This document shows positions 4,178 through 24,384 of a stretch of DNA of 64,000 nucleotides, piece after piece. The stretch covers positions 31,332-95,331 of the forward strand of contig NIVC01003487.1 of NCBI GenBank assembly GCA_002269645.1, given 5' to 3'. Under the pieces are notes generated by a model. It ran no database searches. It was not told the origin of the DNA and saw nothing but the letters and a program-made list of their open reading frames with translations. The position numbers and the translations under genes were made by a program. Position 1 is the first letter of the stretch, and each line of letters begins with the position of its first letter. The stretch comes from Macrostomum lignano (taxonomy: Eukaryota).

Positions 4178-7100
4178 ATGCAGGACAGTAACAACAAACA
4201 GTGCAGACATCAGCATCATCAGCACCGTCACCATCAGCATCATCATCATGGTCAGAGTCAAAGCAGCAGCCAGCAGCCGCAGCAGCAAAAACAGTCAAAT
4301 CAGCAACTCTCACAATCGCAATCGCATTTGCAATTCGATCGTTTCTTCGATTTTGACTTTGCTTCGTCGAGCACCGGCACTGGCACTGCGGTTGTGAAAG
4401 TAAGCCCCCAATTATGCATCACTTATTTCAGGGTCAGGAACGTCTGAGGGCACTTATAATAAGAACAGTACTAGGAAGTCAGGAACTGTAGTAAGCAACA
4501 ATTCATTTTAATAGAAAATTTCACGTAACCATACGACGAGTACCATTTAACATTTAACAATACCATACCATTATAAACAAAAATATAATCATTACCGTAT
4601 AAATATTTTTATCCAATGACTATTTTATCATCATGTAGACCCTAACCTAACGTTCGTACGCTACGGGGGGCTTGATTTCCAGATGACTCACCGCTCGTTT
4701 CGTCTATATAGCACAAGCACACGCTGTTTGGGGGGGAGGGGGTCAGCTCTGCTTTCCCCCCCACAGTAGGGTAAATCATCAGCTGAGAGAGACATCGAGA
4801 GGGAGAACAAAGCGGGCGCGCACAAGTGAACGCTCCAACCCCGCGATGTGTACATTAAGATGGGGGTGTGGGTTTGATATCGACCAGTCCGGGCGAATCC
4901 ACGCTCAGTCCTTATAGAACTGAAACCCCCCCCCTCGATCCACCTCTCTGCCCCCTCCACTAAAGCCCAATTTTCTTACCCTTATCACTTCAACAGCCAT
5001 CTGTACGAAAAAAGTGTCCTACAAGCGCAGCCACCTCGTGCTTTAATAACAACAACAAGCGAAATTTAGCAGCCAGCGATAGTGCCAGTGGCGGCGCTGA
5101 GCCTAGTAGTGTCTCCATATCAGCGGCGCAGCCAGATAACTGTCACAGGCACAGCGATATCCATTTGCACCGGCCTCCAAATAAGGCAAAACAAGCGCAA
5201 CAGCAACAGGAAGAAGAGTCCGACTGTATTGCTTTGCGTCGAAGTTTCTCTCAGATAGCGCAACGCTCCCGGCCTAATAGCTGTGCTATTAAGCTGCGCT
5301 CCTATTCCCAATCTCAATCTCAATCTTCGGCATTCGACGGCGCAGCCGATGCCGCCGCGCCTGATCCGTTCGCTTATCAGGATCGATATCCCTACAATAG
5401 CAGTGCCTGCGGCGGCGACTCCAACTTCAACAAGAGAATGAGCGCGGCTAACAATTCCAGGCGTAGCTCGCGGATTAAGCTACCCAGCACCCGGGCCGAG
5501 TCCAGAGACGAAGGCAATTTCTTTTATCCGGCCGACAGTCTCAGATTGTACGGCCACGCGCAGCTTGTCAACTGCGAGCTCGACGATGAGTCAGACTCTG
5601 GCGCATCCAGCCTGCCTTCGTCTAATGGTTCAACATTGAACTCTTCCTGCGCTTCCATTGATCTGGTGCGATGCAATCGGACCGCATTTGAAGGTGGGAA
5701 ACTGACTGCGTGATTACTGAATTGATATTGATTCTGACTCCTCAGCAGAGACTGACTCCTTTGACAGAGACTTGTACTTCTACTCGCTATACATGGCTTG
5801 ACTGACTTGACTAGTTTGACTTGCCTCACTCCGTCGTCAGATTTTAACTTTAATTATCTGAACTTATTAAGTCTCCTCAGAGACTTGCTCCCCTCTTCAG
5901 CGACTCGTTCCCTTACCTTAGACTTTTTCCCTCCTCAGAGACTCATTCCCCTCCTCAGAGACTCGTTCCCCTCCTCAGATACTCGTTCCCCTCCTCAGAG
6001 ACTTCTTCCCCTCCTCAGAGACTCGTTCCCCTCCTCAGAGACTCGTTCCCCTCCTCAGAGACTCATTCTCCTCTTCAGAGACTCGTTCCCCTCCTCAGAT
6101 ACTCGTTCCCCTCCTCAGAGACTTCTTCCCCTCCTCAGAGACTCGTTCCCCTCCTCAGAGACTCGTTCCCCTCCTCAGAGACTCATTCTCCTCTTCAGAG
6201 ACTCGTTCCCCTCCTCAGAGACTCGTTCCCCTCCTCAGAGACTTCTTCCCCTCCTCAGAGACTTCTTCCCCTCCTCAGAGACTCATTCCCCTCCTCAGAG
6301 ACTCGTTTCCCCCCTCAGAGACTCGTTCCCCTCCTAAAAGAATTGCACTGTACACTAAAATTAGGCATGATGCAGTACTGCAATTCGCGCATGTTGCACA
6401 GGCTTGACCACTCACTGAACTGTCAGTCTTGTCTCAGTTGTTTGTAGCCACAGTCACGACAACCAGGCATGACTGACAGCTGCAGAACATGACATGAAAT
6501 TTATTTATAGCAATGCTGCATTGCTTTGATCATTTGTTTGTTTATTCTGTGCTGCCTGCTTTCACTTATCAGGAAATTGGCATTAATAGAAGTTATCTGG
6601 AGTACACGACAAGTATTTGCTCGCACTCTTATTTAAGCTGCTCAAATTTTTATGGCTTGAGAAATTATGAAAACCGGAAAAGATAATACCAGACAAAAAT
6701 AAGACAGAAGTTTGATGCAAACTGATGCAAAACTTCTGAAATCACTGACGACTAGGCTGAAGAGACAATCCAGGGAACATGATGAATAATTGACTTGAAC
6801 ATTTGCACTGGCCTAATGTACATCCTCAGTAGGTCCTGTACATCGCCAGTAGCAGTCCGCTAACATTCGCTAGCAGAGGGCAGGGAAGGAAGGGTGAGGC
6901 TGGCCCTGCCCTACAATCCCGGACTTTTTTGTACGCTCCATCCAAAACTGCTCCGTCAGGGCCTTTATAGTCTAGCCTGACTAACCCAGCTTTGCATAGC
7001 CTTTGAAAATCCTTTCCCCTGCGGGGGGAACAGATCAGATGAAGGATTTGGGAAAGGGGAAGAGAGGGGGAATCGGGTGCGAGAGAGAGAATGAGGTCGG

Positions 7101-10100
7101 TCCGATCCGAGTGCAAAATTCTATTTGCGAGTAGATGAGGATAATCCATAGGCCTGGAGGCGTCTTTTTATGATGGCGGTTTTTGTCACTAACACCGCTA
7201 GGGACCATCGGGCAGCATCGTCAAATGGCTCAGCTAAAAACTTTCAGCCAGATGGATTTAGTTCAGTTTAGATGGATTTAGTTCAGTTTAGGCGGGTTTA
7301 GTTTATTTTATATGGATTTAGTTTAGTTTAGGTAGTACCTAATGGGTAGGTTTATTTCAATTTAGGTGGGTTTAGTTCAGTTTAGATGGATTTAGTTCAG
7401 TTTAGGCGGGTTTAGTTCATTTTATATGGATTTAGTTTAGTTTAGGATAGGTAGTACCTAATAGGTAGGTTTATTTCAATTTAGGTGAGTTTAGTTCAGT
7501 TTAGGTGAGTTTAGTTCAGTTTAGATGAGTTTAGTTCAGTTTAGATGAGTTTAGTTCAGTTTAGGTGAGTTTAGTTCAGTTTATATGAGTTTAGTTCAGT
7601 TTAGATGAGTTTAGTTCAGTTTAGGTGAGTTTAGTTCAGTTTAGATGAGTTTAGTTCAGTTTAGGTGAGTTTAGTTCATTTTAGATGGATTTAGTTCAGT
7701 TTAGGTGGGTTTAGTTCAGTTTATTAGGTGGGTTTAGTTCAGTTTAGATAGATTTCCTTTACATCAGAAACATTTTAGTTCAGTCCCGTGTTGGGGAAGC
7801 AACAAAGAAAATATTAATATTATTTTTTCGAATGAACTGTACAGAAGCCTTGTACAGTCACTATTGGTGATTTCTTGAAGAAAATAGTCTGATATCAGCA
7901 ATGTCCCTTGAGCCTTGCGTACTGTTTTTAAAAGTTGATTTTTAATCTTTCCAACACCTCCCACTTTCAAGCAGCTTCCTCGGGCTCTCCGCAGCATCGA
8001 CGAATCTCCAGCAGCGAAGACCAGCCGGCTGCCTCTCAGCATCCTCAACCTCATCACCAGCATCCTACTCAGCAGCCGCACCTGCTGGCCGAGTTTAGCA
8101 AGTTCAAGAATGACAGCGGCACCTTCACGGACTCCGAGATGTCACCGGAATTCCGCGGCTGCACACCTGACAAGGTTGGTCACTTTTTAATCTTGACCAG
8201 ATTCCTAGGACTAGTTCTCCTTGGTCAGCTTTTTATCTCACTCTGTCGTTGGGTCAGTCTCTGTCTGGGGGTTGACTCATCCTCAGCGCTGAGTGCACAG
8301 TTGGGTCTCGCTCAAGTTTTACAATTCACAGTCATTGACAAGCCTGCCCAGGCTCTATCATGATTCATTAGTCTGAGTTCCATGCTGGCAGTGTCCAAGT
8401 GCATGTGTGCACTATCTGCAATAGCGCTTGAGGGCTCGGTCTTGGCTGCAAAGTGGCTTTACTTGTGCGCTGCTCAGGCTCAGGTTCTCAGTTGCTACAT
8501 TGGCTATACCGTAGAGCTTTCGGCTTGGCTTACTGTTATTACAGCGCTAAATTGGCCAAATTGCACCTGCCACTATGGGCTTACTATAAGGCTTTAACTA
8601 TTTATTATAACTAACTATGCAGCACAACCAGCCAAGTATAAAACACAGTTTCCACACGGCGCGACTGGCTACAAAAAGAATTAATTAAAAATCATACTTG
8701 TGTAGCTTGTGTATTTTCCATAGTGTTAACTGGATCTGCCGGTTCCAGCCCAATTCGGAATACACTTCCTTTTTTTAGCGTAGTTCGCAGCCGTAGTTTC
8801 CCCTGCGCATGCTGCGTTGGTGCTGCATTCTACAGCTGGAATATGATTTGCATTTAGTGCCCGCAGCCAGCGCCACACTGCTGGATGGCTGCGCAGTTGC
8901 CAGTTTTCTCTTCGCTTAGCCTACAGACCGACTCAAATTTCACGGCATTATGCGTGCCTTCATGGCTAACTGATTTCGGGGGGGGGGGTATTTCTTCTTC
9001 AAATTGACCTCCCAAGACTGGTTTAACCAGCCAGCTCGTCTGTTCAAGTGTTGCAGCTGTGGGCTTGCTGGTCATTCTCACGAGTTTCTCCAGTTTCCTG
9101 GCTCTTTGCACAGGGGGCAGGTTCTATAACTCTGCAATCTCATAAATCTGGGAGCTCAATAATCAGTCCAATTTGACCTAACAAAGAGTTTTACCTGGAT
9201 CTGACTTTCATGAACGTTTCTCGCTTTGCTACCTCTGACTCTCCCTTCTCACTCCCTACTCCTTAGTTCTACATCCACCTAGCCTGACTCTATCCCTTCT
9301 CACTCCCTACTCCTTAGCTCTACATCAACCTAGCCTGACTCTATCCCTTCTCACTCCCTACTCCTTAGCTCTATATCCACCTACCCTGACTCTATCCCTT
9401 CTCACTCCCTACTCCTTAGCTCTATATCCACCTACCCTGACTCTATCCCTTCTCACTCCCTACTCCTTAGCTCTACATCAACCTAGCCTGACTCTATCCC
9501 TTCTCACTCCCTACTCCTTAGCTCTATATCCACCTAGCCCTAGCTCCGCCTCTCCCTTTACTTCCTCCCCTCTGCCTCCCTCTACCCTCTGCCTCCCTCT
9601 CTACCTCCCTCTCCCCTCTGCCTCCTCTGCCTCCTGCCCTTTCTGCCTTTCTCTCCGAATCTACGTGTACTCATCTCCCCTTCCCTTCTCACTCTTCGGA
9701 GAGGGGCCTCTCTTCCCTCCCCACAACATAGCGTCAGCCCCGATAGCCCCAATATAAAGCTATGGAAGTTCAAGCCGCTGCAATTACACAGTCTGCCTCC
9801 AAGTTATCGTAATTATAAAAAACCATTTCGTGGTTTACTAGTAAGAGCCTTATTTACGAGTAAACCCAGTTAAATTTTAAACTGTTCGACTGGTAATCTA
9901 TACGCCTGTCTAGGCCTAGCTGCTGTTGAGAATGTACATGCACTATAACATTGATAATGAGTTCTAATGTTAAGGTTAGAAGTGGCGCTTAAACTCAGTC
10001 ACATAGTCTGATTGGAGTCGGCTGGCTGCGTGTCTGCGAACTGGCTTGTCATGTATCCAGGCGGGGTTGGCGAGACTATCCCCTATATTATTTATAGTTT

Positions 10101-13100
10101 ATATTCTATAATATTTTGTGTGCCAGACCCAGACAAGGTGTCACCATTTTAACAGTCCAGGCACCCGATAACATGTGCTTTTGTATCCGTGATTCCTGTG
10201 ATCGGGGAACAATAGAGATCAAAATCCTTTGGTTTCCAATAGGGATCAGAATCCTATGGTTTCCTATAGGGATCAGAATCCTATGATCTTCAATAGGGAT
10301 CAGAATCCTATGGTTTCCAATAGGGATCAGAATCCTATGGTTTCCTATAGGGATCAGAATCCTATGATCTTCAATAGGGATCAGAATCCTATGGTTTCCA
10401 ATAGGGATCAGAATCCTATGGTTTCCAATAGGGATCAGAATCCTATGATTTCCAATAGGGATCAGAATCCTATGATTTCCAATAGGGATCAGAATCCTAT
10501 GATTTCCAATAGGGATCAGAATCCTATGATCTTCAATAGGGATCAGAATCCTATGGTTTCCAATAGGGATCAGAATCCTATGGTTTCCTATAGGGATCAG
10601 AATCCTATGATCTTCAATAGGGATCAGAATCCTATGGTTTCCAATAGGGATCAGAATACTATGGTTTCCAATAGGGATCAGAATCCTATGATTTCCAATA
10701 GGGATCAGAATCCTATGATTTCCAATAGGGATCAGAATCCTATGATTTCCAATAGGGATCAGAATCCTATGGTTTCCAATAGGGATCAGAATCCTATGAT
10801 TTCCAATAGGGATCAGAATCCTATGATTTCCAGTAGGGATCAGAATCCTATGGTTTCCAATAGGGATCAGAATCCTATGGTTTCCAATAGGGATCAGAAT
10901 CCTATGATTTCCAATAGGGATCAGAATCCTATGATTTCCAATAGGGATCAGAATCCTATGGTTTCCAATAGGGATCAGAATCCTATGATTTCCAATAGGG
11001 ATCAGAATCCTATGATTTCCAATAGGGATCAGAATCCTATGATCTTCAATAGGGATCAGAATCCTATGGTTTCCAATGGGGATCAGAATCCTATGGTTTC
11101 CAATAGGGATCAGAATCCTATGATTTCCAATAGGGATCAGAATCCTATGATTTCCAATAGGGATCAGAATCCTATGATTTCCAATAGGGATCAGAATCCT
11201 ATGGTTTCCAATGGGGATCAGAATCCTATGGTTTCCAATAGGGATCAGAATCCTATGGTTTCCAATAGGGATCAGAATCCTATGATTTCCTATAGGGATC
11301 AGAATCCTATGATCTTCAATAGGGATCAGAATCCTATGGTTTCCAATAGGGATCAGAATACTATGGTTTCCAATAGGGATCAGAATCCTATGATTTCCAA
11401 TAGGGATCAGAATCCTATGGTTTCCAATAGGGATCAGAATCCTATGGTTTCCAATAGGGATCAGAATCCTATGGTTTCCAATAGGGATCAGAATCCTATG
11501 ATTTCCAATAGGGATCAGAATCCTATGATTTCCAATAGGGATCAGAATCCTATGGTTTCCAATAGGGATCAGAATCCTATGATTTCCAATAGGGATCAGA
11601 ATCCTATGATTTCCAATAGGGATCAGAATCCTATGATCTTCAATAGGGATCAGAATCCTATGGTTTCCAATGGGGATCAGAATCCTATGGTTTCCAATAG
11701 GGATCAGAATCCTATGGTTTCCAATAGGGATCAGAATCCTATGATCTTCAATAGGGATCAGAATCCTATGGTTTCCAATAGGGATCAGAATCCTATGGTT
11801 TCCAATAGGGATCAGAATCCTATGATCTTCAATGGGGATCAGAATCCTATGATCTCCAATAGGGATCAGAATCCTATGCTTTCCAATAGGGATCAAAATC
11901 CTATGATCTTCAATGGGGATCAGAATCCTATGATCTCCAATAGGGATCAGAATCCTATGGTTTCCAATAGGGATCAGAATCCCACCCATAACAATAGGGA
12001 TCAGAATCCCGGCCCTCGTTTCCAGCACACCACACAACTTAAAAAGCATGCTCACGGAGCAGAGACGAGACTCACTGTCCTCACTTACCCCACTGCACCA
12101 GGACGCCACCCCACCAAGCAGCAGCAGCAGGCGGAGGAGTCTCCTGAACCACCCGGCGACCTGTCCGATGCGTCAATCAAAAGCCGCAGCACCTTGAACA
12201 GCATAGTCACCGTCATCGAGAGGACGCATCGACGCTCCAGCAGCGGCCAGCAGCAGCCGCAGCAGCAGCTCGTCCTGCTGCCCGACTCCGACAGCAACGG
12301 CGAGAGCGACGGCGAAGAAGGCGGCAGTCCGCGCTGCCAGCTTCGCCGAAGCCAGCAGCAAAGCAAGCAGTCCGGGCAAAAGCAGCGAAAACAGCAGCCG
12401 CAGCCGCAGCAGTCCTCGGGTGACCGGTCGTCTTCGTCGACGCTCGACGGCGACGAAGAGGTGCCGGCGTCGCCGACCTCCCCTGAAGAGGCCGGAGCTG
12501 CCACCGCCGCATCCGCTGAGGACTTCGATGATAAAGATGGAGCGGAGTCTGAGGTAGGCTTGAAGGGTCTGTCCGTGTGTGTCTGTCTGTCCGCATGTGT
12601 CTCTGTGTGTCTGTCAGTCCGTCTGTCCGCATGTCTGTCTGTCTGTCAGCCCGTCTGTCCGCATGTCTGTCTGTCTGTCAGTCCGTCTGTCCGCATGTCT
12701 GTCTGTCTGTCAGTCCGTCTGTCCGTCTGCCTGTCAGTCCGTCTGTCCGCATGTCTATCCTAATTCCTGTCCGCCTGTAGGCCTCCGACCTCACCAGCAT
12801 CTCGGCGGCCGGAGCCTGGGACTACAGCCTCATCCGCTCGCAGCTGCAGTACGAGTTCAACACCTGGGACCGGCCGGCCATTCGCACCTTCGGCATCCGC
12901 GTCCGCGAGATCCAGTGCCCGCCCTCCGAGACCGTCATCGCCGGCTGGACGGACGAGGAGCTGCTCGCCAGGGTCCGCCAGCTCGGCCGCCTCCGCGGCG
13001 CCGCCGTCCGCCTCAACCCGGCGACGCGGCAGTTCAGCGGCCGGGTCCGCGTGCACGTCAACCTGATCCGGCCCATCCGGCTCGGCCGCTCGGAGCTGCC

Positions 13101-16100
13101 GCAGCTGGTGCCGAGGGGTCAGAGCCGCCTGCTGCAGATCACCAGCGCTGTGCGCAGCCAGGAGGTCGTGCAGGCGCTGCTCACCGCCCTGCAGGTCAAG
13201 GAGCAGGCCTACAAGTTTGCCCTGTATGAGCACTCCATTGAGGGGGACAAGTCGGGTGAGTGGAGACTGGGATTCAGGATTTCTGGACATACATGCGCAA
13301 CCTCCAAAATTCGTTCGGCCGTGCGACTTAGTTTTAACAAAAATGCGACGTAGTTTTTGGCCAAAAATGCGACTTACATGTAAAAAACCCTAAAGCAAAT
13401 TTAACGCAACTTTGGGTAAACGGCAGGAGTAACTATGACTGCCTTATTAAGCCAAAATGCCTCGTCAGCTACTTAGTACTACTTCTTGGTTATTTTTTCG
13501 GGATGGCATTTTTGCGACTTTCTTGGTTGGCTGCCAAATCGGTCGGCCGAATCGGCCGACTCGGCCGACTGTTGCGCATGTATGTTTCTGGATGCTGGGG
13601 ATTCGGGATTTCTGGATGCTGGGGATTCGGGATTTGTGGATGCTAAGGATTCGGGATTTGTGGATGCTGGGGATTCAGGATTCGGGATTTCTGGATGCTG
13701 GGGATTCAGGGTTCGTGATTTGTGGATGATGGGGGATTGGGATTTGTGGATGCTGGGGATTTGGGATTTGTGGATGCTGGGGATTCGGGATTAGTGGATG
13801 TTACATACATGCGCAACTGCTGGCCGAGCTGGCCGATCCGGCCACCGTAAATCATGGCTGACCAGGGGTAAGTCGCAAAATTGAGTCGACCAAAAACAGA
13901 AAAACACAAGAACCAAGAAAGAAAGGCAACAGGAAAGCGAAAAAAAGAGCAGTTCAAGGAAAAATGGTGAAGGAAAAGAAAAACAAGTCGCATAAAAAGC
14001 AAACTAAGTCGCAAAAAGGATCAGGTAAGTCGCAACAGGAGCAACTAAGTCGCAAAAAGGATCAGGTAAGTCGCATAAGAAGCAAACTAAGTCGCAAAAA
14101 GGATCAGGTAGGTCGCAACAGGAGCAACTAAGTCGCAAAAAGGATCAGGTAAGTCGCATAAGAAGCAAACTAAGTCGCAAAAAGGATCAGGTAAGTCGCA
14201 ACAGGAGCAACTAAGTCGCAAAAAGGATCAGGTAAGTCGCATAAGAAGCAAACTAAGTCGCAAAAAGGATCAGGTAAGTCGCATAAGAAGCAAACTAAGT
14301 CGCAAAAAGGATCAGGTAAGTCGCAACAGGAGCAACTAAGTCGCAAAAAGGATCAGGTAAGTCGCATAAGAAGCAAACTAAGTCGCAAAAAGGATCAGGT
14401 AAGTCGCAACAGGAGCAACTAAGTCGCAAAAAGGATCAGGTAAGTCGCAAAAAGGATCAGGTAAGTCGCAAAAGGAGCAACTAAGTTGTAAAAAGGATCA
14501 GGTAAGTTGCAATAAGAGCAGCTATATTTAGAATTCAGTTATGTCGCCGATTTATAAGTTTTTAACTAAGCAAAGCAAGCCAATAACAAGATAGCAATTT
14601 AGCAAAATATTAAGTATATTGTGATTATGTAATGTATCTTATCAGACGTCAATTTCAAACTAAAAGAGTCCACTCTGTAAGATATTTTTTTCTGCTTCGT
14701 TGTCATTTGTAACTCGTTCCTGTCGACCTCCAGGAGCATCAGATCGCCAGTGGCTTTTGAGCCAATCATTTACATATGCATCAGGCTTGAAATTAGCCAA
14801 CGGAGGTCCATTTATACGAATCCGCAGCAAATTCTCCAAAGTTTTAGGCGTGAGGCGTGACCTTCTATCATAGGCTATGTGCTTATAGATTGAAAACCCC
14901 CGTTCAGCCTCTGCAGATGATATAGGCAGTGTTAGGACAACCAGGATCAGTTTTTTTATTTTAGGCAGCCATTCAACTGTCCTTTTTTCCATAAAGTGAC
15001 TCCAAAATTTTACGGGGCCTCTACTGCGGTAGGCACAAAAGTCAAACTTGTGTGAAGTAACCAGGCTGTTTATTAGAATAGAAAACTGCCCAGATATTGT
15101 CCTGATGTTGTCTCTAGAATCTGATTCTGAATCTGAATCAGAGTCTCCTGAGACAGGGCTCTCGTCTTGCATACCAAAGCGTCTAGCCAACGGAATTATT
15201 CTTGAGCTGTAAGTGAAAACTGTATGTAATGTCTCAGCCGTAGGCAATGATTCCGGATTGAGTACATCAAATATTGAATAATCATCCTCAGGAAAATATT
15301 TACGCAGTTGACTGACAATGCTATCAATAATGACAAGCCGGATTTCGCTCAGTGCTGGATACGGTCCTACATCAGTAGCATCAGTACTGCATCCCCGGCG
15401 TCTTAGTCGACTACATGGCTGTTTCAACTCAAACCTTTGTGTTGAATCGTCAGTACCAGCAGGGCACACAAAGTCCGAATGAGATAGGTCATTTGTATGA
15501 CAACGTACACGGTATTCTATATCTGCAGTAGGTCCCACAACTCTGCGGCATCTGCACGAATTTAAGAAATCCATAACTCGAGGACCATTGTTTGTCTTTA
15601 ACATTTCTAAGGAACGGATCAAGTCATTGTGGCGTTTTTGTAATCCTATAAATGTACCTCTGGCACTTTGAAACTGCAAAGATTCAAATTCCAAAAGCTT
15701 TAGAATGTCAGTGAGAAATAGGTGCAAGGAATAATATCGTACATTTTTCAATGTCTTCAGCAATCCGGAGGCAGTAGCTTTACTTTCATCATCAAAATCT
15801 GATGAAGTTGAGATGATATTTTCTAGATTTGTGAGAAGAAGGTAGTATGACTTCCTAATTACATCCAGGGCGGACACTTCTGATGCAACCCATCTTATGC
15901 GATAGATTCTTTTAAGTTCATAAAAAACTTTGTCCAATGCTTCTGAAGTTTCAAGTAATGAAGCTTTGCGCTTTGTAGCATGTCGCATGTAAAATTTGTA
16001 TAGAGAATTTATGCTTGTATCAAGGTGCTGCATATATGGGAAGTTTTCAAAAGCATGATAAATTGAAAGTTCCAACTTATGGGCTGCACAGTGATGCTGG

Positions 16101-19100
16101 AAGAAATTGTTCTTAGCCCAAGGCCTGAGTCTGCTCACCAATCCTGCTCGATTTCCTGTCATGACTGCTGCACCATCAGTTGTCACACCCCATAGTCTTT
16201 CTTTGATACCTTCCAGAATATTGTCTTCAGTGAACATACCAATAAGCATTTCATAAATTCTTTGTCCTGTTTCTACTTGAGCAAGGCGTTTGAACCGATA
16301 GAAAAACATCATAGGGTTGCTGTTTTCAAGAATTCTGAAGTAGATCATCAAATAACTATTAGAATGGATGTCAGATGTTGTGTCTAATACAATTGAAATT
16401 GGAAGATCTTTAGAATTTTTTATATACTTCAGTAGCGTTTTATGCATGGTCATACTGATTGATTCAGCCATTGCAGTAGCACTTTTACGATGCCTGTGAT
16501 GACTGCCCATATCCAAGCCATTCTTTATTTGTAAATCAACCATCAGATTATGTGCACTAAATGGAACATTGGCTTTTACTTCAGCATATACAGTCGTTAA
16601 AACCCTGGCAGTTATTTCATCTCTTTTGGTTTGTGCTAGTTTAGCCGCCCTATTCATCTCGTTAATTTGCCTTGCAAGTATGGAGTGGTGTTTCTCTTTC
16701 ATCCAATTGATGGCTTCAGAGTGAAATAAACTTAATGAATGTCTTTGTAGTTTTCTTCGTACACTATCCTTTGCATGTCCATTTGGAACATAACCTGATT
16801 CGGTCACAAATGTCATGCCACGTTTACTTGCTTCATTTGCTGCTGAGGGAAGTGCATTGGCATACTGTTGACAGATTCGGCACTGTATTCCAGATCGCGA
16901 TAGATCATCGGTATTTTGAGTGTATTGAAACCATGTCTTCATTTCATTGGTTACAAATTTCCTCGAAAAGTACCTAAAATAAATTATTTAGATTAGAGGC
17001 AGGCAGTAGATTTAGTAGTAATAGACTAAAAAGGCATTTAATTAAAAGAGAAAAATAAATGCATTAATTTTTCTTACGCTGACTGATGTGTTTCCAAGGA
17101 ATCCAGCCACTGCTCTTGAAAACTAGATGTATCTTCCCAATCCTTTCTTAGGACTTGTTCGGTTCTTGCTTCTCCTGTCCCTGATGGTCCTGATCCTAAT
17201 GCTGATGTTGCTAAACATGCATCTGCAATTGTACTTATGCATGGCCTTTTTCTTTCGGAAGGTCCTGCAATTACAGAGTCACTAATTTGAATATCAACGT
17301 CTGGATCACACGAATTGGACGCATCAGCATCTATATCAACAGCTGAAGGCAAAGGCCTACGTCCATGACAACAAGATCGCTTTAAGGATTGCCTTTGAAC
17401 ATTTATTTGCCTAACAATTTCTACTTCTAGATCAATTGTTTGCTGGTCACTTTCCAGCACCTTATCCACTTCCTGCTCTTGTAGACTTCCAGCTGAGCAA
17501 AAGGCACTTTGTTCCGCATGCCCTGCTGTTTGCGCAGTTTGAACAGCTTGATCTCGATTGGCTGCTATTTCCTGTGAATATTCTATAGCCTTTGCCAGTT
17601 CGTTACGATGTGAGCTTGCTGAGCATGCAGATGGGGGTGGCCTTTCACTTCGTGATGGTGAGCTAGGAGAACTTGTTGGTGAATTAACGATAGTTCCAAT
17701 ATTCTCCTCAAAAATCCAATGTGCGCCTGAGCAGTCATTTTCTTTACCTGGAGTCAATTTGCCAAGTTTCCACCTTGTAAAAAGCAAAGGCTTTTGTACT
17801 TCACTGTTGGATGTAGGACACCGGTTTATGGAATAGTCTTCATGGCCAACTTCATCCCATTCTCTTGCTGGATTTAGGATGTAGTTAGGCTTATCTCTTA
17901 AGGTTGAGTAAATTGATTCAAAAAATGTGCACCTGTTATTGTGTGTACTTCGAGCATATATTATCATGTCATGTACATTACGCCTTATTATTTCAGCCAA
18001 GGAATCGTCAATTGTAAGCTTGTCTAAAAAAATAGGCCTTCTTTGGGTTAAATGCATCTTAGCTAGCCGCAGTTTTCCAATGCTACCTCTTGAACTAGCA
18101 TCATCAGTTCTAGAATAGTCTCTTTGATGCAAGAGGATGATGGCCATTGCACTTTTACCATTTCCATTTTTTAATGCATTTGGATCAGTTGGCAGTGTCC
18201 TACTAGCAGACTTGAAGAAACTAGCAATAGACAACTGTGATGATCCTGCAGAGGCAGGAGCTGTTCTTGGTAGCCCATGTCCAGCTTTTCCTTGGTATCC
18301 AATAGAGGAGTCAGTGAAAAACATATCTGCTGTTCCCAGTTTTTCCTTTGATGCTATTACAAACAAACTATTTCTCTCTTTGAAGCTAGTTCGATAGAAG
18401 TCAGCAGAAAATGTTATCACTGGCTTTCTAACATCACCACTATATTCTTGGACACCAATCAAAAGAAAATCACGCAGTCGTACAGATTCTAAAGTTGAGG
18501 CAGTAGCACTACTTGGACAAACTTTTTTTAACTCTATGAACTCTGCATATTCCTGCGATCCAATATTTGGTTCATCTGTATTAAGCTCATTAATGACAAT
18601 GGAGCACTCTTGAGCTAGGCAGTTATTAAAAAGTAATATGAGCATCATGCTATGCAGAACACTCAAACAATGAGTGCAAGGCATGATCCTTTCTTTGTCT
18701 TTCATTCAAAGACGAAATTTCTGGCTACAATGTTAAGGAATTTTTTTGTTAGGGATAGCTGTGATCAAATAGTAATGATACAACTGGTATAAAATGAAAA
18801 TAAACTCAATAACATATTTTTTGGGAACTTACCTTTGACGTGTAATTACTAACTGAATATAATAGTAACACCAAGGATTCCACAAAGGCTACTGGATTGA
18901 AGTTAAGTTTAAAGGGCTAAAAGTCGAAGGTTAAATAAAATGAGATAACCTGTAAAGCAAGAGAAAGATATTCTTTTTATGGGCAAAGCAAAGTCAGCGC
19001 GGCAAAGGTAGCATGGGCAAAGGTAGAGTGAAGTAAAAGAAAATGCCAAAGAGCTAAATATGTACAAGAAAAGGTCAACCAACTATGCTAGTTGGATTTT

Positions 19101-20722
19101 TATATGATAAGATTAAGAACAAAAAGAGCCTTGGAAATGGTAAGGACAGCGGCTGCACATGTATGCTAATGGTAGCTGGTGCTTGGTAGCACAAGGAGTA
19201 TGTTGACATTTGGAAATTTAGCACAGGGGAATGAAGTATTCAACACTAGCACTATTGTACTTAGGATGGCTATGTTCAAGTTTAGTATATTTGGACTATA
19301 CATTTTAGGATTTTATTTTTTCCGAAAGGGTAAGTTTGACAAGTGTACTGTTTGTATGTACTTTTATATATTCCTTTCGATAAGGACAACATGCTACATG
19401 TATTACCACATTCATTTTTCACTCATTTCTATAGCAAACTATTCATGCATACAAAAACTATTTATATGTAGATTGTAGACATTGTTTGTTTATGGCCCAT
19501 GCATCAATGCTGTGCAGCAATATAGCATTGTTGCACTGAAAAAAAGTTATATACTATTACTCTAAAATAATCTCTAAAATGATGTTAAAATGTCCAGTTT
19601 CCTAAAAAATAGCAATAGAGGCCTGCATGAATGCACAGCAAGCTTGCCAGTGAGTAAAAACCTCCGTAACTCTGTTGGCCTTCTTTAAGTCCCATAAAAA
19701 AGGCGTAGCGCAAAGGGTAGTCGGGTGAAAATAAATTTAATGGAACAATATGACACTTTAGTTCATAACTTCATACCATAGACATAAGTATATATATAAT
19801 TATAGACACTCATATTATTAGCATTGCTATACTCCCAGCCATGCTTGAGTGCCTCATTAATGCATAGTTTAGCAATACTCGTTAGTCGTTATAATGGATG
19901 TATAAAAACAAACAAGTAAATTTTAGAAATTCAGTTTTTCAACATTCGTGATTCGTAATATCTTGTTTTGCAAAATGTTTTGTAATGTTTTATAATGTCT
20001 TGTTTTGTAATATTTCGTGAAAACATTGAAACTTAACTTGAAGACAAGCTATATATTTTCTAGAAAAAGCTTCTACTAACGAAAAAACTAAGTCGCAAAA
20101 CTAAGTCGCATTTTTGGTCAAAACTAAGTCGCACGGCCAGCGTAATTTCAGAGGTTGCGCATGTATGGGATGTTAGGGATTCAGGATTGGAGGTGCTGGA
20201 TAGAGTGCTTTAAGTTTTAAATTATTTAATACTTTACTTCGAAGTATATTCACTATTCGAATGGGTTCATCATTCTGAGCCCTTAGTGTTCACGACGGTT
20301 GACCTGTCAAACCTTTCCATTATTATCTTCGAATCAAAGGCCAATTGTACTCGTATGATTTTCGTGTGTTCACGAGTTCTGGTCCCGCGCCACCCCTTCA
20401 CAGTGACCTTCCGTCGGCTGCACCCCACCGAGAGCCCGCTGGCCCTGGTGCTGTCCTGGCTGCACGGCACCTCAGCGGTAGCGGACGGCTCCTCCGAAGA
20501 CGATGGCAGCTCCGTGTTCGAAAGAAAGAAAATCGTGCTGCAGGAGAACGACTCGGGCCTGGTTAATGTGAGTTCTGGGCACCGCCTGTGCATTGCGGCT
20601 GCAATAAGACAGACAGACAGCCAGGCAGACAGACAGACAGACAGACAGACAGCCAGGCAGACAGACAGGCAGACAGACAGACCAGCAGACAGACAGACAG
20701 ACAGTCAGACAGCCAGCCAGGC

Positions 20723-20763
<41 letters not shown>

Positions 20764-20877
20764 GGCAGGTAGGCAGGCAGGCAGGCAGACAGCCAGGCAG
20801 ACAGCCAGGCAGACAAACAGACAGACAGGCAGGCAGGCAGACAGCCAGGCAGACAAACAGGCAGGCAGACAGCCAGG

Positions 20878-20908
<31 letters not shown>

Positions 20909-21029
20909 CCAGGCAGACAGACAGACAGACAGACAGGCAGGCAGGCAGACAGACAGACAGACAGACAGGCAGACAGGCAGGCAGGCAGGGAGACAGCCAG
21001 GCAGACAAACAGACAGGCAGACAGCCAGG

Positions 21030-21060
<31 letters not shown>

Positions 21061-21118
21061 CCAGACAGACAGACAGACAGGCAGGCAGACAGACAGACAG
21101 ACAGACAGACAGCCAGGC

Positions 21119-21171
<53 letters not shown>

Positions 21172-21269
21172 GGCAGGCAGACAGCCAGGCAGACAAACAG
21201 ACAGACAGGCAGGCAGGCAGACAGCCAGGCAGACAAACAGGCAGGCAGACAGCCAGGCAGACAGCCAGG

Positions 21270-21304
<35 letters not shown>

Positions 21305-21467
21305 GCAGACAGACAGACAGACAGACAGACACAGACAGGCAGACAGAGAGACAGGCAGACAGAGAGACAGACAGACAGGCAGGCAGGCAGACAGCCAGGC
21401 AGACAAACAGACAGACAGGCAGGCAGGCAGACAGCGAGGCAGACAAACAGGCAGGCAGACAGCCAGG

Positions 21468-21524
<57 letters not shown>

Positions 21525-21738
21525 CAGCAGACGCAGCCGGCAGCCCCCCCCCCCCAATCCGCAGTGGTCGGCCTTCTCCGTGCCAGAGCTCAGCAACTTC
21601 CTGCACATCCTGCAGCGGGAGGAGTCAGAGTACCGCGAGTCCATCCAGCTCAAGTACCTGCTTGTGAAGCGGGAGATGCGGCGCCGCCTGAGGCAGCTGG
21701 ACAAGCAGAAGCAGGCGCTGGAGGAGGACTGGCCGTAG
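4178..21738 (+). CDS. RASSF: RASSF1/5-like protein (low-complexity N-terminus, RA domain, SARAH domain), ~819 aa; exons 4178-4399, 4997-5693, 7975-8174, 12026-12553, 12781-13255, 20404-20567, 21565-21738
   Basis: RA-like FSGRVRVHVNLIRP...VRSQEVVQALL...YKFALYE. KKIVLQENDSGLVN|WSAFSVPELSNFLHILQREE closely parallels RASSF1 ENDSGEVNWDAFSMPELHNFLRILQREE. All introns are GT-AG with matching phases (total 2460 nt). The last four exons are secure; linkage of the first three and the 12026 acceptor are less so. Confidence 0.85.
5870..6336. repeat. 20-bp minisatellite (agagactcgttcccctcctc)
   Basis: Period of 20 directly visible; intronic. Confidence 0.95.
7252..7750. repeat. 20-bp minisatellite (gtttagttcagtttagatga)
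   Basis: Period of 20; intronic. Confidence 0.95.
9232..9545. repeat. 51-bp tandem repeat (ctctatcccttctcactccctactccttagctct...), ~6 copies
   Basis: Direct repeats visible. Confidence 0.9.
10215..12010. repeat. 27-bp satellite (atagggatcagaatcctatggtttcca), ~66 copies
   Basis: The 9-aa periodic translation (NRDQNPMVS / HRILIPIGN) confirms the 27-bp unit. Confidence 0.97.
12560..12770. repeat. GTCT-based intronic microsatellite/minisatellite
   Basis: Fills the 227-bp intron 12554-12780. Confidence 0.85.
13288..13584. mobile_element. 297-bp hAT-type MITE, cognate to the adjacent 6.36-kb element
   Basis: TIR CATACATGCGCAAC at both ends; 8-bp TSD TTTCTGGA (13280-13287 and 13585-13592); internal TGCGACTT motifs. 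Confidence 0.92.
13590..13800. repeat. ~24-bp minisatellite (ggatgctggggattcgggatttgt) into which both hAT elements inserted
   Basis: Related sequence flanks both elements (13268-13287 and 20168-20190). Confidence 0.85.
13984..14510. repeat. Subterminal ~20-22-bp tandem array built on the AAGTCGCA motif, inside the hAT element
   Basis: Alternating aagtcgcaaaaaggatcaggt / aagtcgcaacaggagcaact units; the same motif occurs at least 3 times at the other end (20089-20133). Confidence 0.9.
14660..18705 (-). CDS. Two-exon ~1313-aa protein: signal-peptide-like N-terminus, LTD-like domain, linker, ZNF862/C17orf113-type hAT transposase; exons 18705-17078 and 16973-14660
   Basis: GT-AG intron 17077-16974 (GC|gtaagaa...attttag|G) joins the ORFs in frame (HQSA-YFSRKFVTNEMKTW; 3942 nt). 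hAT motifs: SIVLDTTSD, TTDGA, HCAAH, RWVAS, SSAEAERGFS, DRRSRL. N-terminal IVINELNTD...EFIEL and C-terminal LTPGKENDC in exon 1. Confidence 0.88.
20587..21530. repeat. (ACAG/GCAG)n microsatellite filling RASSF intron 6
   Basis: Direct; it generates several spurious ORFs. Confidence 0.97.
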
Positions 21739-22336
21739 GCGGCCGTTGCAAGCAGCAGCTGATTCAGCAATTTCCTGTGTAAAAATGCGCATCTCCCTCA
21801 GCCTCTACTCGGCATCGTCCGAAACTCTTTCAAAGAGCTCGCATGCTGTTTCCAGTTCTCAACTTCCACACGCCTCATCTGAGTACTTTTATTTAATTGC
21901 GGCTGCCTGCAACAGGTGAGCGGATATTGGCTGCCCAGCCGCCATTTTGATTGGCTGCTCAATGCTGACGGTTTCTGTATGAACTGAATGAACTTGTATT
22001 TAAAAAATTATAAATCGTAGCCTATGTACGCCACTGTGACTACTTACTGAAAGTAGCTTAAAACAAAATATTTTTGTGTCTGCTAAATTAAAAGAATCTT
22101 TTTTTCTGCCGTTCGCCCCTGCAACCGGTTTCTGCTAATTAAGTTCTTCTGTGTGCTAAAAATTTAACGTTATAACTTAAGAAATATATTGCCCACCGGT
22201 TGAGTACTTCGGAATTGGATAGCTCAAATCACTGCATCCTCTTGCTTGCATTTCTCGTTACTCAGTAATACTACTTGTAAATGTAAGTAGTATCAGGATT
22301 TTTAACCGATCAGGTTCCGCCTACGATGATAGGTAG

Positions 22337-23105: not shown

Positions 23106-24384
23106 TTAGGGTGAGCCAAAAGTTTCCGGAATTTTTAGAATCGAACTTTTAGTTAATTTTTGTCTATGGAAAAGCTTAAAAGCAGCAACCATCTACTATG
23201 CTGTTGGCCAGCCTTATCATCACTCTTTAGCTTAACATTGCTCAGTTTCCCGACCCTGCCTACTTAAGCCAGCAAACGCATCCAATGGAACTGCCAAGAA
23301 CTGAATGGCGAGCATGCAATTCTGCTCAACCACTTTCATGCGGGACGCAACGCAGCAGAGGCACATCGCGAGTTGTTGCAGCTGATGGACCCACATGCAC
23401 CCTCCAAGTCGTCGGTATACGACTGGTTCTCTCGCTTTGCTGAGGAGAACTATGAGCTGAAGGACAAGCCGAGGTCAGGCCGACCCCCTGCTGCTGATGG
23501 CGATGCCGTTCTCCAAGCCCTTGAGGACAATCCGGACTACAGCGTGCGCAAGCTGTCAGCCGCTACTGGGGTGTCCTATGGCACGGTCCGGCGAAGCCTA
23601 TGCAGACAATTAAGGTGCCGAAGAAGCTAACTCTGATGCTCCATGAGCTGACACCCCAGCAGTTGAGAGCCAGGGTGGATGTGGCAACTTCGAATCTTCG
23701 CCAGGCCGGTTCGCCAAACTTTCTCAAGTCGATAATCGCTCAAGACGAGAAGTGGGTCTGCTATGAGAACCCAAGCACATCAGCCGTCTGTGTCGATGCT
23801 TCTGAAGAACTACCCAGCTGCCCAATGCGGAACCCCCACTGCGGCAAGGAGCTGCTCTCTTTCTGGTTCTGCTCGTCTGGCCCTGTTTTCTGGGAGGTCA
23901 TCCCGCATGGCATGGCTGTGAACGCGGAGGTGATCTGCAGCGAACTGGAGCAGGTCGCCCGTTTGCTGCGATCCGTGTGCCCGGGACACTGCGACAAGGT
24001 GCTCCTCTTCGACAATGCGCGGCCTCACAAAGCAAGACTCACCCAGGCCAAGCTGGCAAGCCTGGGCTTCAGTGTTTTGCCCCACCCACCATACTCGCCA
24101 GACCTCTCGCCATGTGACTACCATGTGTTCAGGTCTCTCCAGAGCTTTTGTGATGGACAGCGGTTCGCCAACAAGCAACATGTGGAGCAGGCAGTGCAGA
24201 AATGGATTGATTCAAAGCCTGCGAGCTTCTGGAGGGAGGGGATTGAGGCATTGCCAGCAAGATGGGAGAGGGTCAGGGCCTTGAATGGCAACTACATCAC
24301 ATCGCTGTAAACTGTTTGTTCTTGACACTATATTTGTTATAGTTTTAAAATGTTCAAATTCCGGAAACTTTTGGCTCACCCTAA
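23106..24384 (+). mobile_element. Mariner (DD34D) transposon, 1279 bp
   Basis: TIRs ttagggtgagccaaaagtttccggaattt / aaattccggaaacttttggctcaccctaa; TA TSD on both sides. Confidence 0.95.
23285..24310 (+). pseudogene. Mariner transposase with two frameshifts (~23312 and ~23600-23615)
   Basis: HTH region (SVYDWFSRF...DKPRSGRP); IIAQDEKW, LFDNARPH, YSPDLSPCDYHVF, with 34 residues between D2 and D3. Confidence 0.9.

What the first reader, a model, noticed from the sequence alone, without database searches (positions are those of the whole stretch)
14660..18705. Intact hAT transposon encoding a transposase fused to an LTD-like, signal-peptide-bearing N-terminal domain
Seen: the two minus-strand ORFs (543 and 760 aa) are joined in frame by a 104-bp GT-AG intron into ~1313 aa, inside an element with perfect TIRs and TSD. 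Exon 1 starts with a hydrophobic stretch (SMMLILLFNNCLA-QEC), then IVINELNTD..EFIEL, LKNG..AIILL and SINRC...LTPGKENDC. Inference: these motifs resemble lamin-tail-domain-like extracellular modules seen in bacterial and some uncharacterised animal proteins. A nuclear hAT transposase carrying a secretory-type domain is unexpected, and suggests captured cargo that moves with an apparently young element.
Basis: partly seen in the sequence, partly recalled or inferred. Interest (0 to 1): 0.82.

Follow-up and report, generated by a model that had tools for sequence, protein, structure and literature searches.

The report
Mobile hAT transposon with lamin-tail-like domain
This is an intact cut-and-paste hAT transposon of the flatworm Macrostomum lignano whose transposase carries a signal-peptide-like leader and a lamin-tail-like domain, an old and conserved architecture shared by a large, unannotated group of animal transposases.

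Summary
Two minus-strand ORFs (543 and 760 aa) are joined in frame by a 104-bp GT-AG intron into a 1313-aa protein.

- **Element:** 6364 bp (13804-20167), with perfect 14-bp inverted ends (CATACATGCGCAAC) and a perfect 8-bp target duplication (GGATGTTA). A 297-bp miniature copy lies next to it.
- **Host and siblings:** the host is Macrostomum lignano. Two sibling copies sit at other loci with their own 8-bp duplications.
- **C-terminal half:** a hAT transposase with its catalytic motifs intact.
- **Residues 34-335:** homologous to a genuine lamin-tail-domain repeat of an amphioxus protein (profile-profile probability 99.7%, E 4.5e-26). Pfam's own LTD model does not reach threshold, and the fold search is inconclusive.
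- **Leader:** 64 of 75 relatives have a hydrophobic leader before the domain.

The fusion is not recent cargo. At least 16 relatives, about 26-45% identical in the N-domain, encode it as a continuous reading frame, most of them complete. The domain is under purifying selection as strong as the transposase (dN/dS 0.14-0.19 against 0.14).

What the leader and domain do is unknown. I found no description of this architecture in the literature searched. I rate it a new variant of a known kind, of moderate to high interest.

The parts
13796..13803 (.). Target-site duplication, left copy (GGATGTTA)
   Evidence: Identical to 20168-20175 and immediately outside the TIRs.
13804..13817 (+). Terminal inverted repeat at the 3' end of the element relative to the gene (CATACATGCGCAAC)
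   Evidence: Perfect 14-nt inverse match to 20154-20167. The same ends bound sibling copies L006 and L007.
13869..14524 (+). 3' subterminal repeat array. It holds 23 copies of TAAGTCGCA in 41/83-bp tandem units and is a candidate set of transposase-binding sites.
   Evidence: TRF array 13985-14524. All 28 TAAGTCGCA matches in the window lie in subterminal regions of this element or its MITE, against 0.36 expected. The binding role is inferred by analogy with subterminal repeats of other hAT elements.
14660..16973 (-). Exon 2: residues 543(part)-1313 plus the stop codon. It encodes the CxxC...H...H zinc finger (C574, C577, H621, H627), the DDE catalytic core (D740, D809, E1233; CxxH at 838-841; RW at 903-904) and the hAT dimerisation domain (about residues 1196-1261).
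   Evidence: Pfam Dimer_Tnp_hAT E 4.2e-8, 33.3 bits against a cut-off of 21.4. Matches Hermes transposase at the C-terminus, E 2e-4. Catalytic motifs are conserved in 20 family members. Coordinates.
16974..17077 (-). 104-bp GT-AG intron, phase 2
   Evidence: GTAAG...TTTTAG, and in frame. The same position and phase have GTAAGT donors in relatives L001 and L004. Intronless relatives read straight through, with an identical 52-residue W..C spacing.
17078..17700 (-). Exon 1, linker: residues 336-543(part). It is low-complexity and variable, with a conserved basic cluster (ERKRPC, residues 484-489) and a WEDTxxF motif (523-529).
   Evidence: Alignments. dN/dS is 0.30-0.34, more relaxed than the flanking domains.
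17701..18606 (-). Exon 1, LTD-like domain (residues 34-335) with two large insertions. Invariant residues are E40, E58, D246, C296, N323 and C325.
   Evidence: hhalign against 8 LTD repeats of an amphioxus protein: probability 99.6-99.7%, E 2e-24 and 4.5e-26, over the whole 181-182-residue unit. That protein hits Pfam LTD at E 7.5e-95. dN/dS is 0.14-0.19. Conservation.
18607..18705 (-). Exon 1, start codon and hydrophobic, signal-peptide-like leader (residues 1-33: MKDKER + CLSVLHSMMLILLF + NNCLA)
   Evidence: A stop codon lies directly upstream of the ATG. 64 of 75 relatives have a leader with a 9-residue Kyte-Doolittle mean of at least 2.0; the median leader is 27 aa. SignalP was not available.
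18706..20153 (-). 5' non-coding part of the element (presumed promoter and 5' UTR), with three TAAGTCGCA subterminal repeats at 20089-20133
   Evidence: Aligns to sibling copy L007 at 93.7% over window 19279-20167. Its role as a promoter is inferred.
20154..20167 (-). Terminal inverted repeat at the 5' end of the element
20168..20175 (.). Target-site duplication, right copy (GGATGTTA)
13288..13584 (.). 297-bp non-autonomous miniature element (MITE) of the same family. It has the same 14-bp TIRs, its own 8-bp TSD TTTCTGGA (13280-13287 and 13585-13592), and is inverted relative to the large element.
   Evidence: About 90% identical to the 5' terminal region of sibling copy L006.

Best explanation
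Window 13804-20167 is an intact, probably autonomous copy of a hAT-superfamily DNA transposon of Macrostomum lignano. It lies inside an intron of a host gene.

**How it moves.** It moves by DDE-catalysed cut-and-paste, which leaves 8-bp target duplications.

**What it encodes.** Its single two-exon gene encodes a 1313-aa transposase with these parts, in order:
- a hydrophobic, signal-peptide-like leader (residues 1-33);
- a lamin-tail-domain (LTD)-like beta-sandwich module with insertions and conserved cysteines (34-335);
- a variable linker with a basic, NLS-like cluster;
- a CxxC..H..H zinc finger;
- a DDE/RNase-H core;
- the hAT dimerisation domain.

**Age of the fusion.** The leader plus LTD module is not recent cargo. 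It is the ancestral architecture of a large, essentially unannotated clade of animal hAT transposases, and it is kept by purifying selection.

**Shown:** the anatomy, mobility, homology, conservation and selection.

**Inferred:**
- The LTD module works as part of the transposase, as a binding or localisation module.
- TAAGTCGCA subterminal repeats are the transposase-binding sites.

**Working model for the leader (about 40%).** It is a real ER-targeting signal, inherited from a secreted LTD protein. It diverts most of the protein away from the nucleus, so that only a minor fraction transposes. That fraction would either escape translocation or, in M. lignano, lack the leader through alternative RNA processing.
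For: **Element and mobility**
- Perfect 14-bp TIRs and an 8-bp TSD.
- A neighbouring MITE with its own TSD.
- Two sibling copies at unrelated loci of assembly GCA_002269645.1, with TSDs AATTTAAA and CTTGGGTT.

**Species.** P0004 is 99% identical and P0005 is 73% identical; both are M. lignano proteins.

**Transposase**
- Dimer_Tnp_hAT scores above Pfam's cut-off.
- There is a C-terminal match to Hermes transposase.
- D740, D809, E1233, CxxH and RW are conserved in 20 relatives.
- The near-identical P0004 carries the FAM200-ZBED5_RNase-like family PF27073.

**Fusion**
- The intron is GT-AG and in frame.
- The intron site and phase are conserved in two relatives.
- Intronless relatives are continuous across the junction with identical spacing.
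- At least 16 reading frames of 0.9-1.25 kaa carry both halves.

**LTD homology.** hhalign gives 99.6-99.7%, E 2e-24 and 4.5e-26, over the whole repeat unit of a Pfam-verified LTD protein.

**Selection.** dN/dS is 0.14-0.19 for the LTD domain, 0.14 for the transposase and 0.30-0.34 for the linker.

**Leader.** 64 of 75 relatives have a hydrophobic leader. Cysteines C34, C259, C296 and C325 are conserved. In the amphioxus LTD protein the signal-like leader also directly precedes the first LTD.
Against: - No RNA evidence for the splice or for expression was available.
- Pfam's own LTD model does not hit the window protein. It is sub-threshold in 2 of 31 relatives, best E 0.0099.
- The AlphaFold model is only moderate (pLDDT 71). 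Foldseek against the PDB gave no significant match and no lamin tail, only Ig variable domains at E of 0.011 or weaker.
- Signal-peptide status rests on hydrophobicity alone.
- A transposase routed into the ER lumen could not reach chromosomal DNA, so the leader model needs an unproven escape route.
- Transposition activity of this copy is untested.
- Both sibling copies examined are defective. One has a 1.3-kb deletion. The other has frameshifts and E to K at the catalytic glutamate.
Confidence: 0.8

Rival explanations
1. The leader is not used as a secretion signal. The LTD-like module acts in the nucleus as a DNA-, chromatin-, lamina- or partner-binding or multimerisation module of the transposase. 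The hydrophobic N-terminus is then a structural or membrane-peripheral element.
For: - The protein has an NLS-like basic cluster, a zinc finger and an intact DDE core, and it must reach nuclear DNA.
- In the bacterial nuclease ExeM, deleting the LTD lowers nuclease activity in vitro, so an LTD can assist a DNA-acting enzyme (PMC6085458).
- The window's own leader is a weak one, interrupted by His and Ser.
Against: - Leaders differ in sequence but stay hydrophobic in 64 of 75 relatives, as signal peptides do.
- The closest LTD relatives are repeats of an amphioxus protein with its own N-terminal hydrophobic leader and a C-terminal hydrophobic (membrane-span-like) segment, as read from its sequence.
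- Conserved cysteines fit an oxidising compartment.
Confidence: 0.3
2. In M. lignano the element makes two products. One is a leader + LTD + linker protein, made from unspliced mRNA because a stop codon follows the donor site at once. The other is a leaderless 760-aa transposase starting at M554, made for example by spliced-leader trans-splicing onto the exon 2 acceptor. On this view the fusion protein is minor or absent.
For: - The unspliced frame ends at TAA inside the donor GTAAG.
- NCBI's model of the sibling copy starts at MKTWFQY.
- Trans-splicing is very common in this species (PMC5730564).
Against: - Most relatives have no intron here and encode the fusion as one ORF.
- M554 is not conserved: P0003 has ARKTW at that position.
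- Selection on the linker and junction spacing implies a single polypeptide.
Confidence: 0.15
3. It is a domesticated host gene derived from a hAT transposase, not a mobile element.
For: - Strong purifying selection acts across species.
- Host-transposase fusion genes are common among FAM200/ZBED5-type hAT relatives (my own knowledge).
Against: - Perfect TIRs and TSD.
- Copies at three unrelated loci, each with a different TSD.
- A MITE derivative.
- Decayed siblings.
Confidence: 0.03
4. Exon 1 is an unrelated gene fragment or nested insertion that lies next to a transposase ORF by chance.
For: None beyond the separate ORFs.
Against: The same order is found in more than 16 continuous fusion reading frames and in the sibling subfamily L006. 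The junction spacing is conserved.
Confidence: 0.01

Closest known systems
hAT-superfamily DNA transposons (Hermes, Ac, hobo; the Buster / FAM200-ZBED5 / DUF4371-type branch)
   Same: - 8-bp TSD, short TIRs and subterminal short repeats.
- DDE core with CxxH and RW motifs and an insertion domain.
- C-terminal hAT dimerisation domain.
- N-terminal zinc finger ahead of the core.
- Deletion derivatives and MITEs.
   Different: - It carries about 540 extra N-terminal residues: a hydrophobic leader, an LTD-like domain and a linker.
- None of the four TSDs fits the published Buster (nnnTAnnn) or Ac (nTnnnnAn) consensus, as I recall them.
- Pfam DUF4371 is not detected in the window protein itself.
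Lamin tail domain (Pfam PF00932) proteins, especially the multi-LTD protein of Branchiostoma floridae (LOC118427361, UniProt C3ZWX4 family), which has an N-terminal leader and a C-terminal hydrophobic segment
   Same: - Colinear motifs across the whole unit: VINE(L/V)N, E(F/Y)IEL, F.IGS, NG...A..LL, VD..VY, S.NRC, TPG..NDC.
- A leader directly before the first LTD.
- Two shared cysteines.
   Different: - A single copy, not a tandem array.
- Two large insertions of about 60 and 35 residues, and two further conserved cysteines.
- Below Pfam's threshold.
- Joined to a transposase.
Bacterial extracellular nucleases of the ExeM/NucH type (signal sequence + LTD + nuclease domains)
   Same: The same order of parts: signal sequence, then LTD, then a DNA-cleaving enzyme. 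In ExeM the LTD contributes to full nuclease activity in vitro (PMC6085458).
   Different: - The catalytic domains are unrelated (EEP/OB-fold against DDE/RNase H).
- The host is bacterial and the enzyme is truly extracellular.
- There is no evidence of common descent of the architecture. This is an analogy only.
Host-transposase fusion genes of vertebrates (GTF2IRD2, ZBED/SCAND3, KRABINER and similar)
   Same: A hAT-type transposase joined to a domain of host-gene origin.
   Different: Those genes are immobile and domesticated, and have lost their TIRs. Here the fusion is inside a mobile element with TIRs, TSDs and MITEs.

Membership tests
hAT superfamily transposon | 8-bp target-site duplication | tested here: met
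   Four independent insertions have perfect 8-bp TSDs: GGATGTTA, TTTCTGGA (the MITE), AATTTAAA (L007) and CTTGGGTT (L006).
hAT superfamily transposon | Short terminal inverted repeats | tested here: met
   14-nt perfect TIR CATACATGCGCAAC, shared by all four copies.
hAT superfamily transposon | C-terminal hAT dimerisation domain (PF05699) | tested here: met
   E 4.2e-8, 33.3 bits against a cut-off of 21.4. Aligns to the Hermes C-terminus, including the catalytic Glu region.
hAT superfamily transposon | DDE catalytic triad with CxxH and RW motifs | tested here: met
   D740, D809, E1233, C838..H841 and R903-W904 are present and conserved in 20 relatives. Assignment to Hermes D180/D248/E572 is by motif knowledge. 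Only the Glu region aligned directly.
hAT superfamily transposon | Excision and integration activity | not testable with these tools
   Needs a transposition assay. Multiple copies with different TSDs show past mobility only.
Buster / FAM200-ZBED5 / DUF4371 branch of hAT | FAM200-ZBED5_RNase-like (PF27073) and DUF4371 (PF14291) regions | tested here: inconclusive
   PF27073 is on record for the 99%-identical P0004 and for P0005. DUF4371 is on record for relatives P0006 and P0007. The Pfam copy used here gave no DUF4371 hit for the window protein at E up to 1.
Buster / FAM200-ZBED5 / DUF4371 branch of hAT | TSD consensus nnnTAnnn (from memory of Arensburger et al. 2011) | tested here: not met
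   0 of 4 TSDs have TA at positions 4-5. With only four sites this is weak evidence.
Lamin tail domain (LTD, PF00932) | Match to the Pfam LTD model above the gathering score | tested here: not met
   No hit for the window protein at E up to 1. LTD is the commonest family among 31 relatives, but in only 2 of them, best E 0.0099 and below threshold.
Lamin tail domain (LTD, PF00932) | Homology to verified LTDs by profile-profile comparison | tested here: met
   hhalign probability 99.6% and 99.7%, E 2.2e-24 and 4.5e-26, over 181-182 aligned columns covering the whole repeat unit of P0122. P0122 hits Pfam LTD at E 7.5e-95 in 8 stretches.
Lamin tail domain (LTD, PF00932) | Ig-like beta-sandwich fold resembling solved lamin tails | tested here: inconclusive
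   The 13-sequence AlphaFold model has pLDDT 71 and pTM 0.77 and is mostly beta strands. The best Foldseek PDB hits are Ig variable domains at E of 0.011 or weaker, and no lamin tail is listed.
Secretory (signal-peptide-bearing) proteins | N-terminal n-h-c region | tested here: met
   The window leader reads MKDKER / LSVLHSMMLILLF / NNCLA-QE. 64 of 75 relatives have a hydrophobic window with KD of at least 2.0 within a median 27-aa leader. This is a heuristic only; SignalP was not run.
Secretory (signal-peptide-bearing) proteins | Actual ER targeting and cleavage | not testable with these tools
   Needs localisation or in-vitro translocation experiments.

The most novel reading that the evidence does not exclude
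The leader is a working secretion signal. These transposases are then truly routed into the ER and nuclear-envelope lumen, or exported from the cell, as the signal + LTD + nuclease enzymes of bacteria are. That would make a clade of eukaryotic transposases whose activity, regulation or spread between cells or hosts depends on the secretory pathway.
Probability: 0.12. Interest if true: 0.9.

Novelty: new variant of a known kind. Interest (0 to 1): 0.62.

Why it matters
**Why it is unusual.** Transposases work in the nucleus. A conserved leader resembling a secretion signal, followed by a cysteine-bearing extracellular-type LTD, is not expected on one. Here it is kept under selection in hundreds of sequence clusters, so it must serve the element.

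**What could follow.** Working out what it does could reveal a new way in which a transposon controls where or when its enzyme acts. It would also give the poorly understood LTD fold a testable function next to a DNA-cleaving enzyme.

**Practical points.**
- M. lignano is a transgenic model animal, and an intact native hAT element is a candidate tool.
- The family is almost absent from annotated databases.
- Current annotation of the sibling copies calls only the transposase half.
- Some contigs of the family are mis-binned in bacterial MAGs.

Tried and rejected
1. **Pfam on exon 1.** No family at E up to 1.
2. **PDB sequence search.** A search with the N-domain profile gave only chance hits. 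A search with the amphioxus LTD profile gave nothing useful.
3. **First AlphaFold run.** With 4 sequences the pLDDT was 46 and the model was unusable. The second run, with 13 sequences, was moderate, but Foldseek against the PDB was not significant.
4. **Word-indexed homology search.** The N-domain alone found 3 relatives and the 31-sequence profile found 10. The exhaustive HMMER search was needed to see the family.
5. **Names and taxa of relatives.** Three cluster look-ups gave no informative organism names, apart from amphioxus for the LTD protein and two bacterial-MAG labels.
6. **More loci from metagenomes.** Two alignments were too diverse to search with. Two scans found nothing.
7. **TIR/TSD search in distant relatives' contigs L008-L011.** None was found. 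A 15-nt inverted pair in L010 (791-805 and 5742-5756) has no matching TSD.
8. **Exact look-up of window proteins.** The window's exon 1 ORF is not on record. The spliced protein could not be looked up.
9. **Literature.** Searches on LTD with transposase, hAT with signal peptide, and LTD with transposable element found nothing describing this architecture.

**Rejected readings:** a nested or chance juxtaposition, and a domesticated gene (see the rival explanations).

Full report
**1. Observation**

The two minus-strand ORFs are real: 17074-18705 (543 aa) and 14660-16942 (760 aa).

Exon 1 ends at 17078. The next bases are GTAAG. The intron ends TTTTAG at 16974. Exon 2 starts at 16973.

The 104-bp intron joins the frames through a split codon (GC|G). 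This gives 3939 coding nt, or 1313 aa. A stop codon lies directly upstream of the ATG at 18705, so the frame cannot extend further 5' within this exon.

**2. The element**

I found a perfect 14-nt inverted repeat, CATACATGCGCAAC, at 13804-13817 and 20154-20167. It is flanked by a perfect 8-bp direct repeat, GGATGTTA, at 13796-13803 and 20168-20175.

The motif has 4 perfect matches (5 within two mismatches) in the window, against 0.38 expected within two mismatches. The element is therefore 6364 bp, from 13804 to 20167.

Two of the other matches bound a 297-bp miniature element at 13288-13584. It has its own 8-bp duplication, TTTCTGGA.

All 28 copies of TAAGTCGCA in the window lie in the subterminal regions of these two elements, against 0.36 expected:
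- 23 are in a 41/83-bp tandem array near the 3' end;
- 3 are near the 5' end;
- 2 are in the miniature element.

By analogy with other hAT elements these are likely transposase-binding sites. This is an inference.

Both insertions sit in a GGATTC-type minisatellite. It follows what looks like an exon-intron boundary of a GC-rich host gene.

**3. Species and sibling copies**

The transposase half is 99% identical to Macrostomum lignano protein BOX15_Mlig021755g1 (P0004). It is 73% identical to BOX15_Mlig001790g1 (P0005). I fetched both loci from assembly GCA_002269645.1.

| Copy | Position | TSD | Relation to the window copy | State |
|---|---|---|---|---|
| L007 | 6079-11323 | AATTTAAA | 97.6% identical over about 4 kb; 93.7% over the 5' region | Lacks window 17953-19278, which removes the leader and the first ~250 codons |
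| L006 | 5117-11011 | CTTGGGTT | Diverged subfamily; has the exon 1 homologue (65% and 57% aa identity in two pieces), the intron region and exon 2 | Two frameshifts, and Lys in place of the catalytic Glu |

Both copies have the same TIRs, and their flanks are unrelated to the window's. Some indels may be errors of the assembly, which I recall, without having checked, to be long-read based.

So the family has moved repeatedly. The window copy is the only intact one of the three examined, and exon 1 is present in a sibling subfamily.

**4. The transposase half**

- Pfam finds the hAT dimerisation domain above threshold.
- The C-terminus aligns to Hermes transposase through the catalytic-Glu region.
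- The hAT blocks are present in the window copy and conserved in 20 relatives:

| Block | Key residue(s) |
|---|---|
| LDTTSD | D740 |
| TTDGAAVM | D809 |
| HCAAHKLEL | C838, H841 |
| IRWVASE | W904 |
| SSAEAERGFS | E1233 |

- A CxxC...H.....H zinc finger precedes the core (C574, C577, H621, H627).
- Precomputed Pfam hits place the near-identical P0004 in FAM200-ZBED5_RNase-like. Relatives also hit DUF4371.

**5. The fusion is real and old**

- P0003 (38% identical, from a JGI metagenome) reads from the N-domain through the junction into the zinc finger without an intron.
- P0008 (1011 aa) and P0006 (1009 aa) are single ORFs with both halves.
- An exhaustive HMMER search with the N-domain profile found 235 clusters (at 50% identity) with E up to 1e-3, and 123 with E up to 1e-10.
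- Among the listed hits, at least 16 are proteins of 0.9-1.25 kaa that carry hAT motifs or the hAT dimerisation domain behind the N-domain.
- Many mid-length ORFs also read through into the zinc finger.
- From the conserved Trp of WEDT to the first zinc-finger Cys is 52 residues in the spliced window protein, and 52 in intronless P0022.
- The two closest relatives (62% and 53% identical) have GTAAGT donors at the same codon and phase.

Without RNA reads, this is strong comparative support for the splice.

**6. The N-domain is LTD-like**

Pfam gives no hit for the window protein. It gives sub-threshold LTD hits in only 2 of 31 relatives.

One hit of the profile search, P0122, is a 1693-aa amphioxus protein annotated as uncharacterised. 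A longer member of its cluster (UniProt C3ZWX4) is named "LTD domain-containing protein". P0122 matches Pfam LTD at E 7.5e-95 in 8 stretches.

I cut its 8 repeat units and compared profiles. hhalign gave probability 99.6%, E 2.2e-24, with 76 family sequences. It gave 99.7%, E 4.5e-26, with 31. The alignment covers the whole 181-182-residue unit.

The match is colinear:
- VINELN
- EFIEL
- FVIGS
- NG..A..LL
- VD..VY
- S.NRC
- TPG..NDC

The window domain has two large insertions, at about residues 125-175 and 195-235.

The structure test was inconclusive. A 13-sequence AlphaFold model has pLDDT 71 and pTM 0.77 and is strand-rich. Foldseek against the PDB returned only Ig variable domains at E of 0.011 or weaker.

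**7. Leader and cysteines**

75 relatives start with Met and have 12-70 residues before the first strand. Of these, 64 have a 9-residue window with mean Kyte-Doolittle hydropathy of at least 2.0. The median leader is 27 aa.

The leaders are not conserved in sequence, only in character, as signal peptides are.

The window leader has:
- a basic start (MKDKER);
- a hydrophobic stretch (LSVLHSMMLILLF);
- a small-residue end (NNCLA|QEC).

In the amphioxus LTD protein a similar leader directly precedes the first LTD.

| Cysteine | Conservation |
|---|---|
| C296 | 76/76 |
| C325 | 76/76 |
| C259 | 70/74 |
| C34 | 54/74 |

C296 and C325 are shared with the amphioxus repeats. I could not run a dedicated signal-peptide predictor.

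**8. Selection**

Nei-Gojobori estimates against the paralogue L006:

| Region | dN/dS against L006 |
|---|---|
| LTD domain | 0.19 |
| Linker | 0.34 |
| Transposase | 0.14 |

Against L001 and L004 the LTD domain gives 0.135 and 0.17. dS is high (0.9-1.6), so these values are approximate. Even so, the N-domain is clearly as constrained as the enzyme.

**9. How it probably works**

*Shown.* This is a mobile hAT element. It has intact catalytic motifs, defined ends, subterminal repeats, a MITE derivative and decayed siblings.

*Inferred.* The zinc finger, and perhaps the LTD, recognise the TAAGTCGCA repeats. The DDE core excises and reinserts the element with 8-bp duplications.

*The leader plus LTD module.* It most likely came from the 5' end of a gene for a secreted LTD protein. 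It is now an integral, selected part of the enzyme.

I favour a localisation or dosage-control role for a real ER signal, at about 40%. A purely nuclear binding role for the LTD stands at about 30%. A two-product arrangement in M. lignano stands at about 15%; it would use intron retention and trans-splicing, which is common in this species (PMC5730564).

The bacterial nuclease ExeM offers an analogy only. It has a signal sequence, an LTD and nuclease domains, and its LTD is needed for full activity in vitro (PMC6085458).

**10. Novelty**

Full-text searches found no paper that links LTDs with transposases, or hAT transposases with signal peptides, in this sense. The library is incomplete and Repbase could not be consulted.

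Almost all relatives come from unannotated metagenome or sequencing-run assemblies. The M. lignano annotation of the sibling copies calls only the transposase half.

I rate it a new variant of a known kind: a hAT transposon clade with an unusual accessory module that appears to be undescribed.

**11. Limits**

- There is no expression data.
- No signal-peptide predictor was run.
- No confident structure match was obtained.
- The taxonomic range is unknown.
- The ends of distant relatives were not found.
- Only three large copies were examined in this genome.

Noticed in passing
window 13288-13584: A 297-bp MITE of the same hAT family. It has the same 14-bp TIRs, its own TSD TTTCTGGA and two TAAGTCGCA repeats. 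It was inserted 211 bp from the large element, in the opposite orientation, and is about 90% identical to the 5' terminal region of sibling copy L006.
   Followed up: yes
window 13180-13260 and 20290-20560: GC-rich coding-like sequence ends in ...AAGTCGG|GTGAGT at about 13255 and resumes near 20300-20555, followed by GTGAGT. The transposon and MITE appear to lie in an intron of a plus-strand host gene, inside a GGATTC-type minisatellite (13585-13800).
   Followed up: partly
window 12576-12784 and 20600-21000: Long (TGTC/GACA)n-type microsatellites in inverse orientation flank the region about 1 kb outside the element on each side. They create long spurious ORFs (for example 10229-12763 and 20286-21782).
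   Followed up: no
L007 6079-11323 (M. lignano NIVC01000196.1): A sibling copy, 97.6% identical, with a 1.3-kb internal deletion that removes the leader and the first ~250 codons. NCBI's gene model (P0004) starts at the internal Met of exon 2. It ends early because of a frameshift in an A-run.
   Followed up: yes
L006 5117-11011 (M. lignano NIVC01002610.1): A copy of a diverged subfamily (73% aa identity) with the same TIRs. It has two frameshifts, and Lys replaces the catalytic Glu (SAEAKRGFS). It is a dead copy, or partly an artefact of the assembly.
   Followed up: partly
P0022 (GCA_024232655.1, 'Gammaproteobacteria bacterium' MAG) and P0093 ('Bacteroidota bacterium' MAG): Contigs that encode this animal-type LTD-hAT fusion are deposited in bacterial metagenome-assembled genomes. 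Eukaryotic contamination or mis-binning is the likely cause.
   Followed up: no
window 23600-24310(+), 52515-54473(-), 55919-56479(+): Other mobile-element remnants: a mariner/Tc1-type transposase fragment (Transposase_1, DDE_3), a reverse transcriptase ORF (RVT_1, E 3e-28) and another DDE_3 fragment.
   Followed up: no
window 38585-40258(-): An ORF with a galactosyltransferase domain (PF01762, E 1.4e-19). It is probably a host gene.
   Followed up: no
L010 5264-5708: A distant relative's contig carries several copies of TTTGAACCATTTCGC, together with palindromic TTCGCAGCGCTGCGCGCTGCGAA units, downstream of the transposase ORF. These may be its own subterminal repeats. No TIR/TSD pair could be confirmed.
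   Followed up: partly
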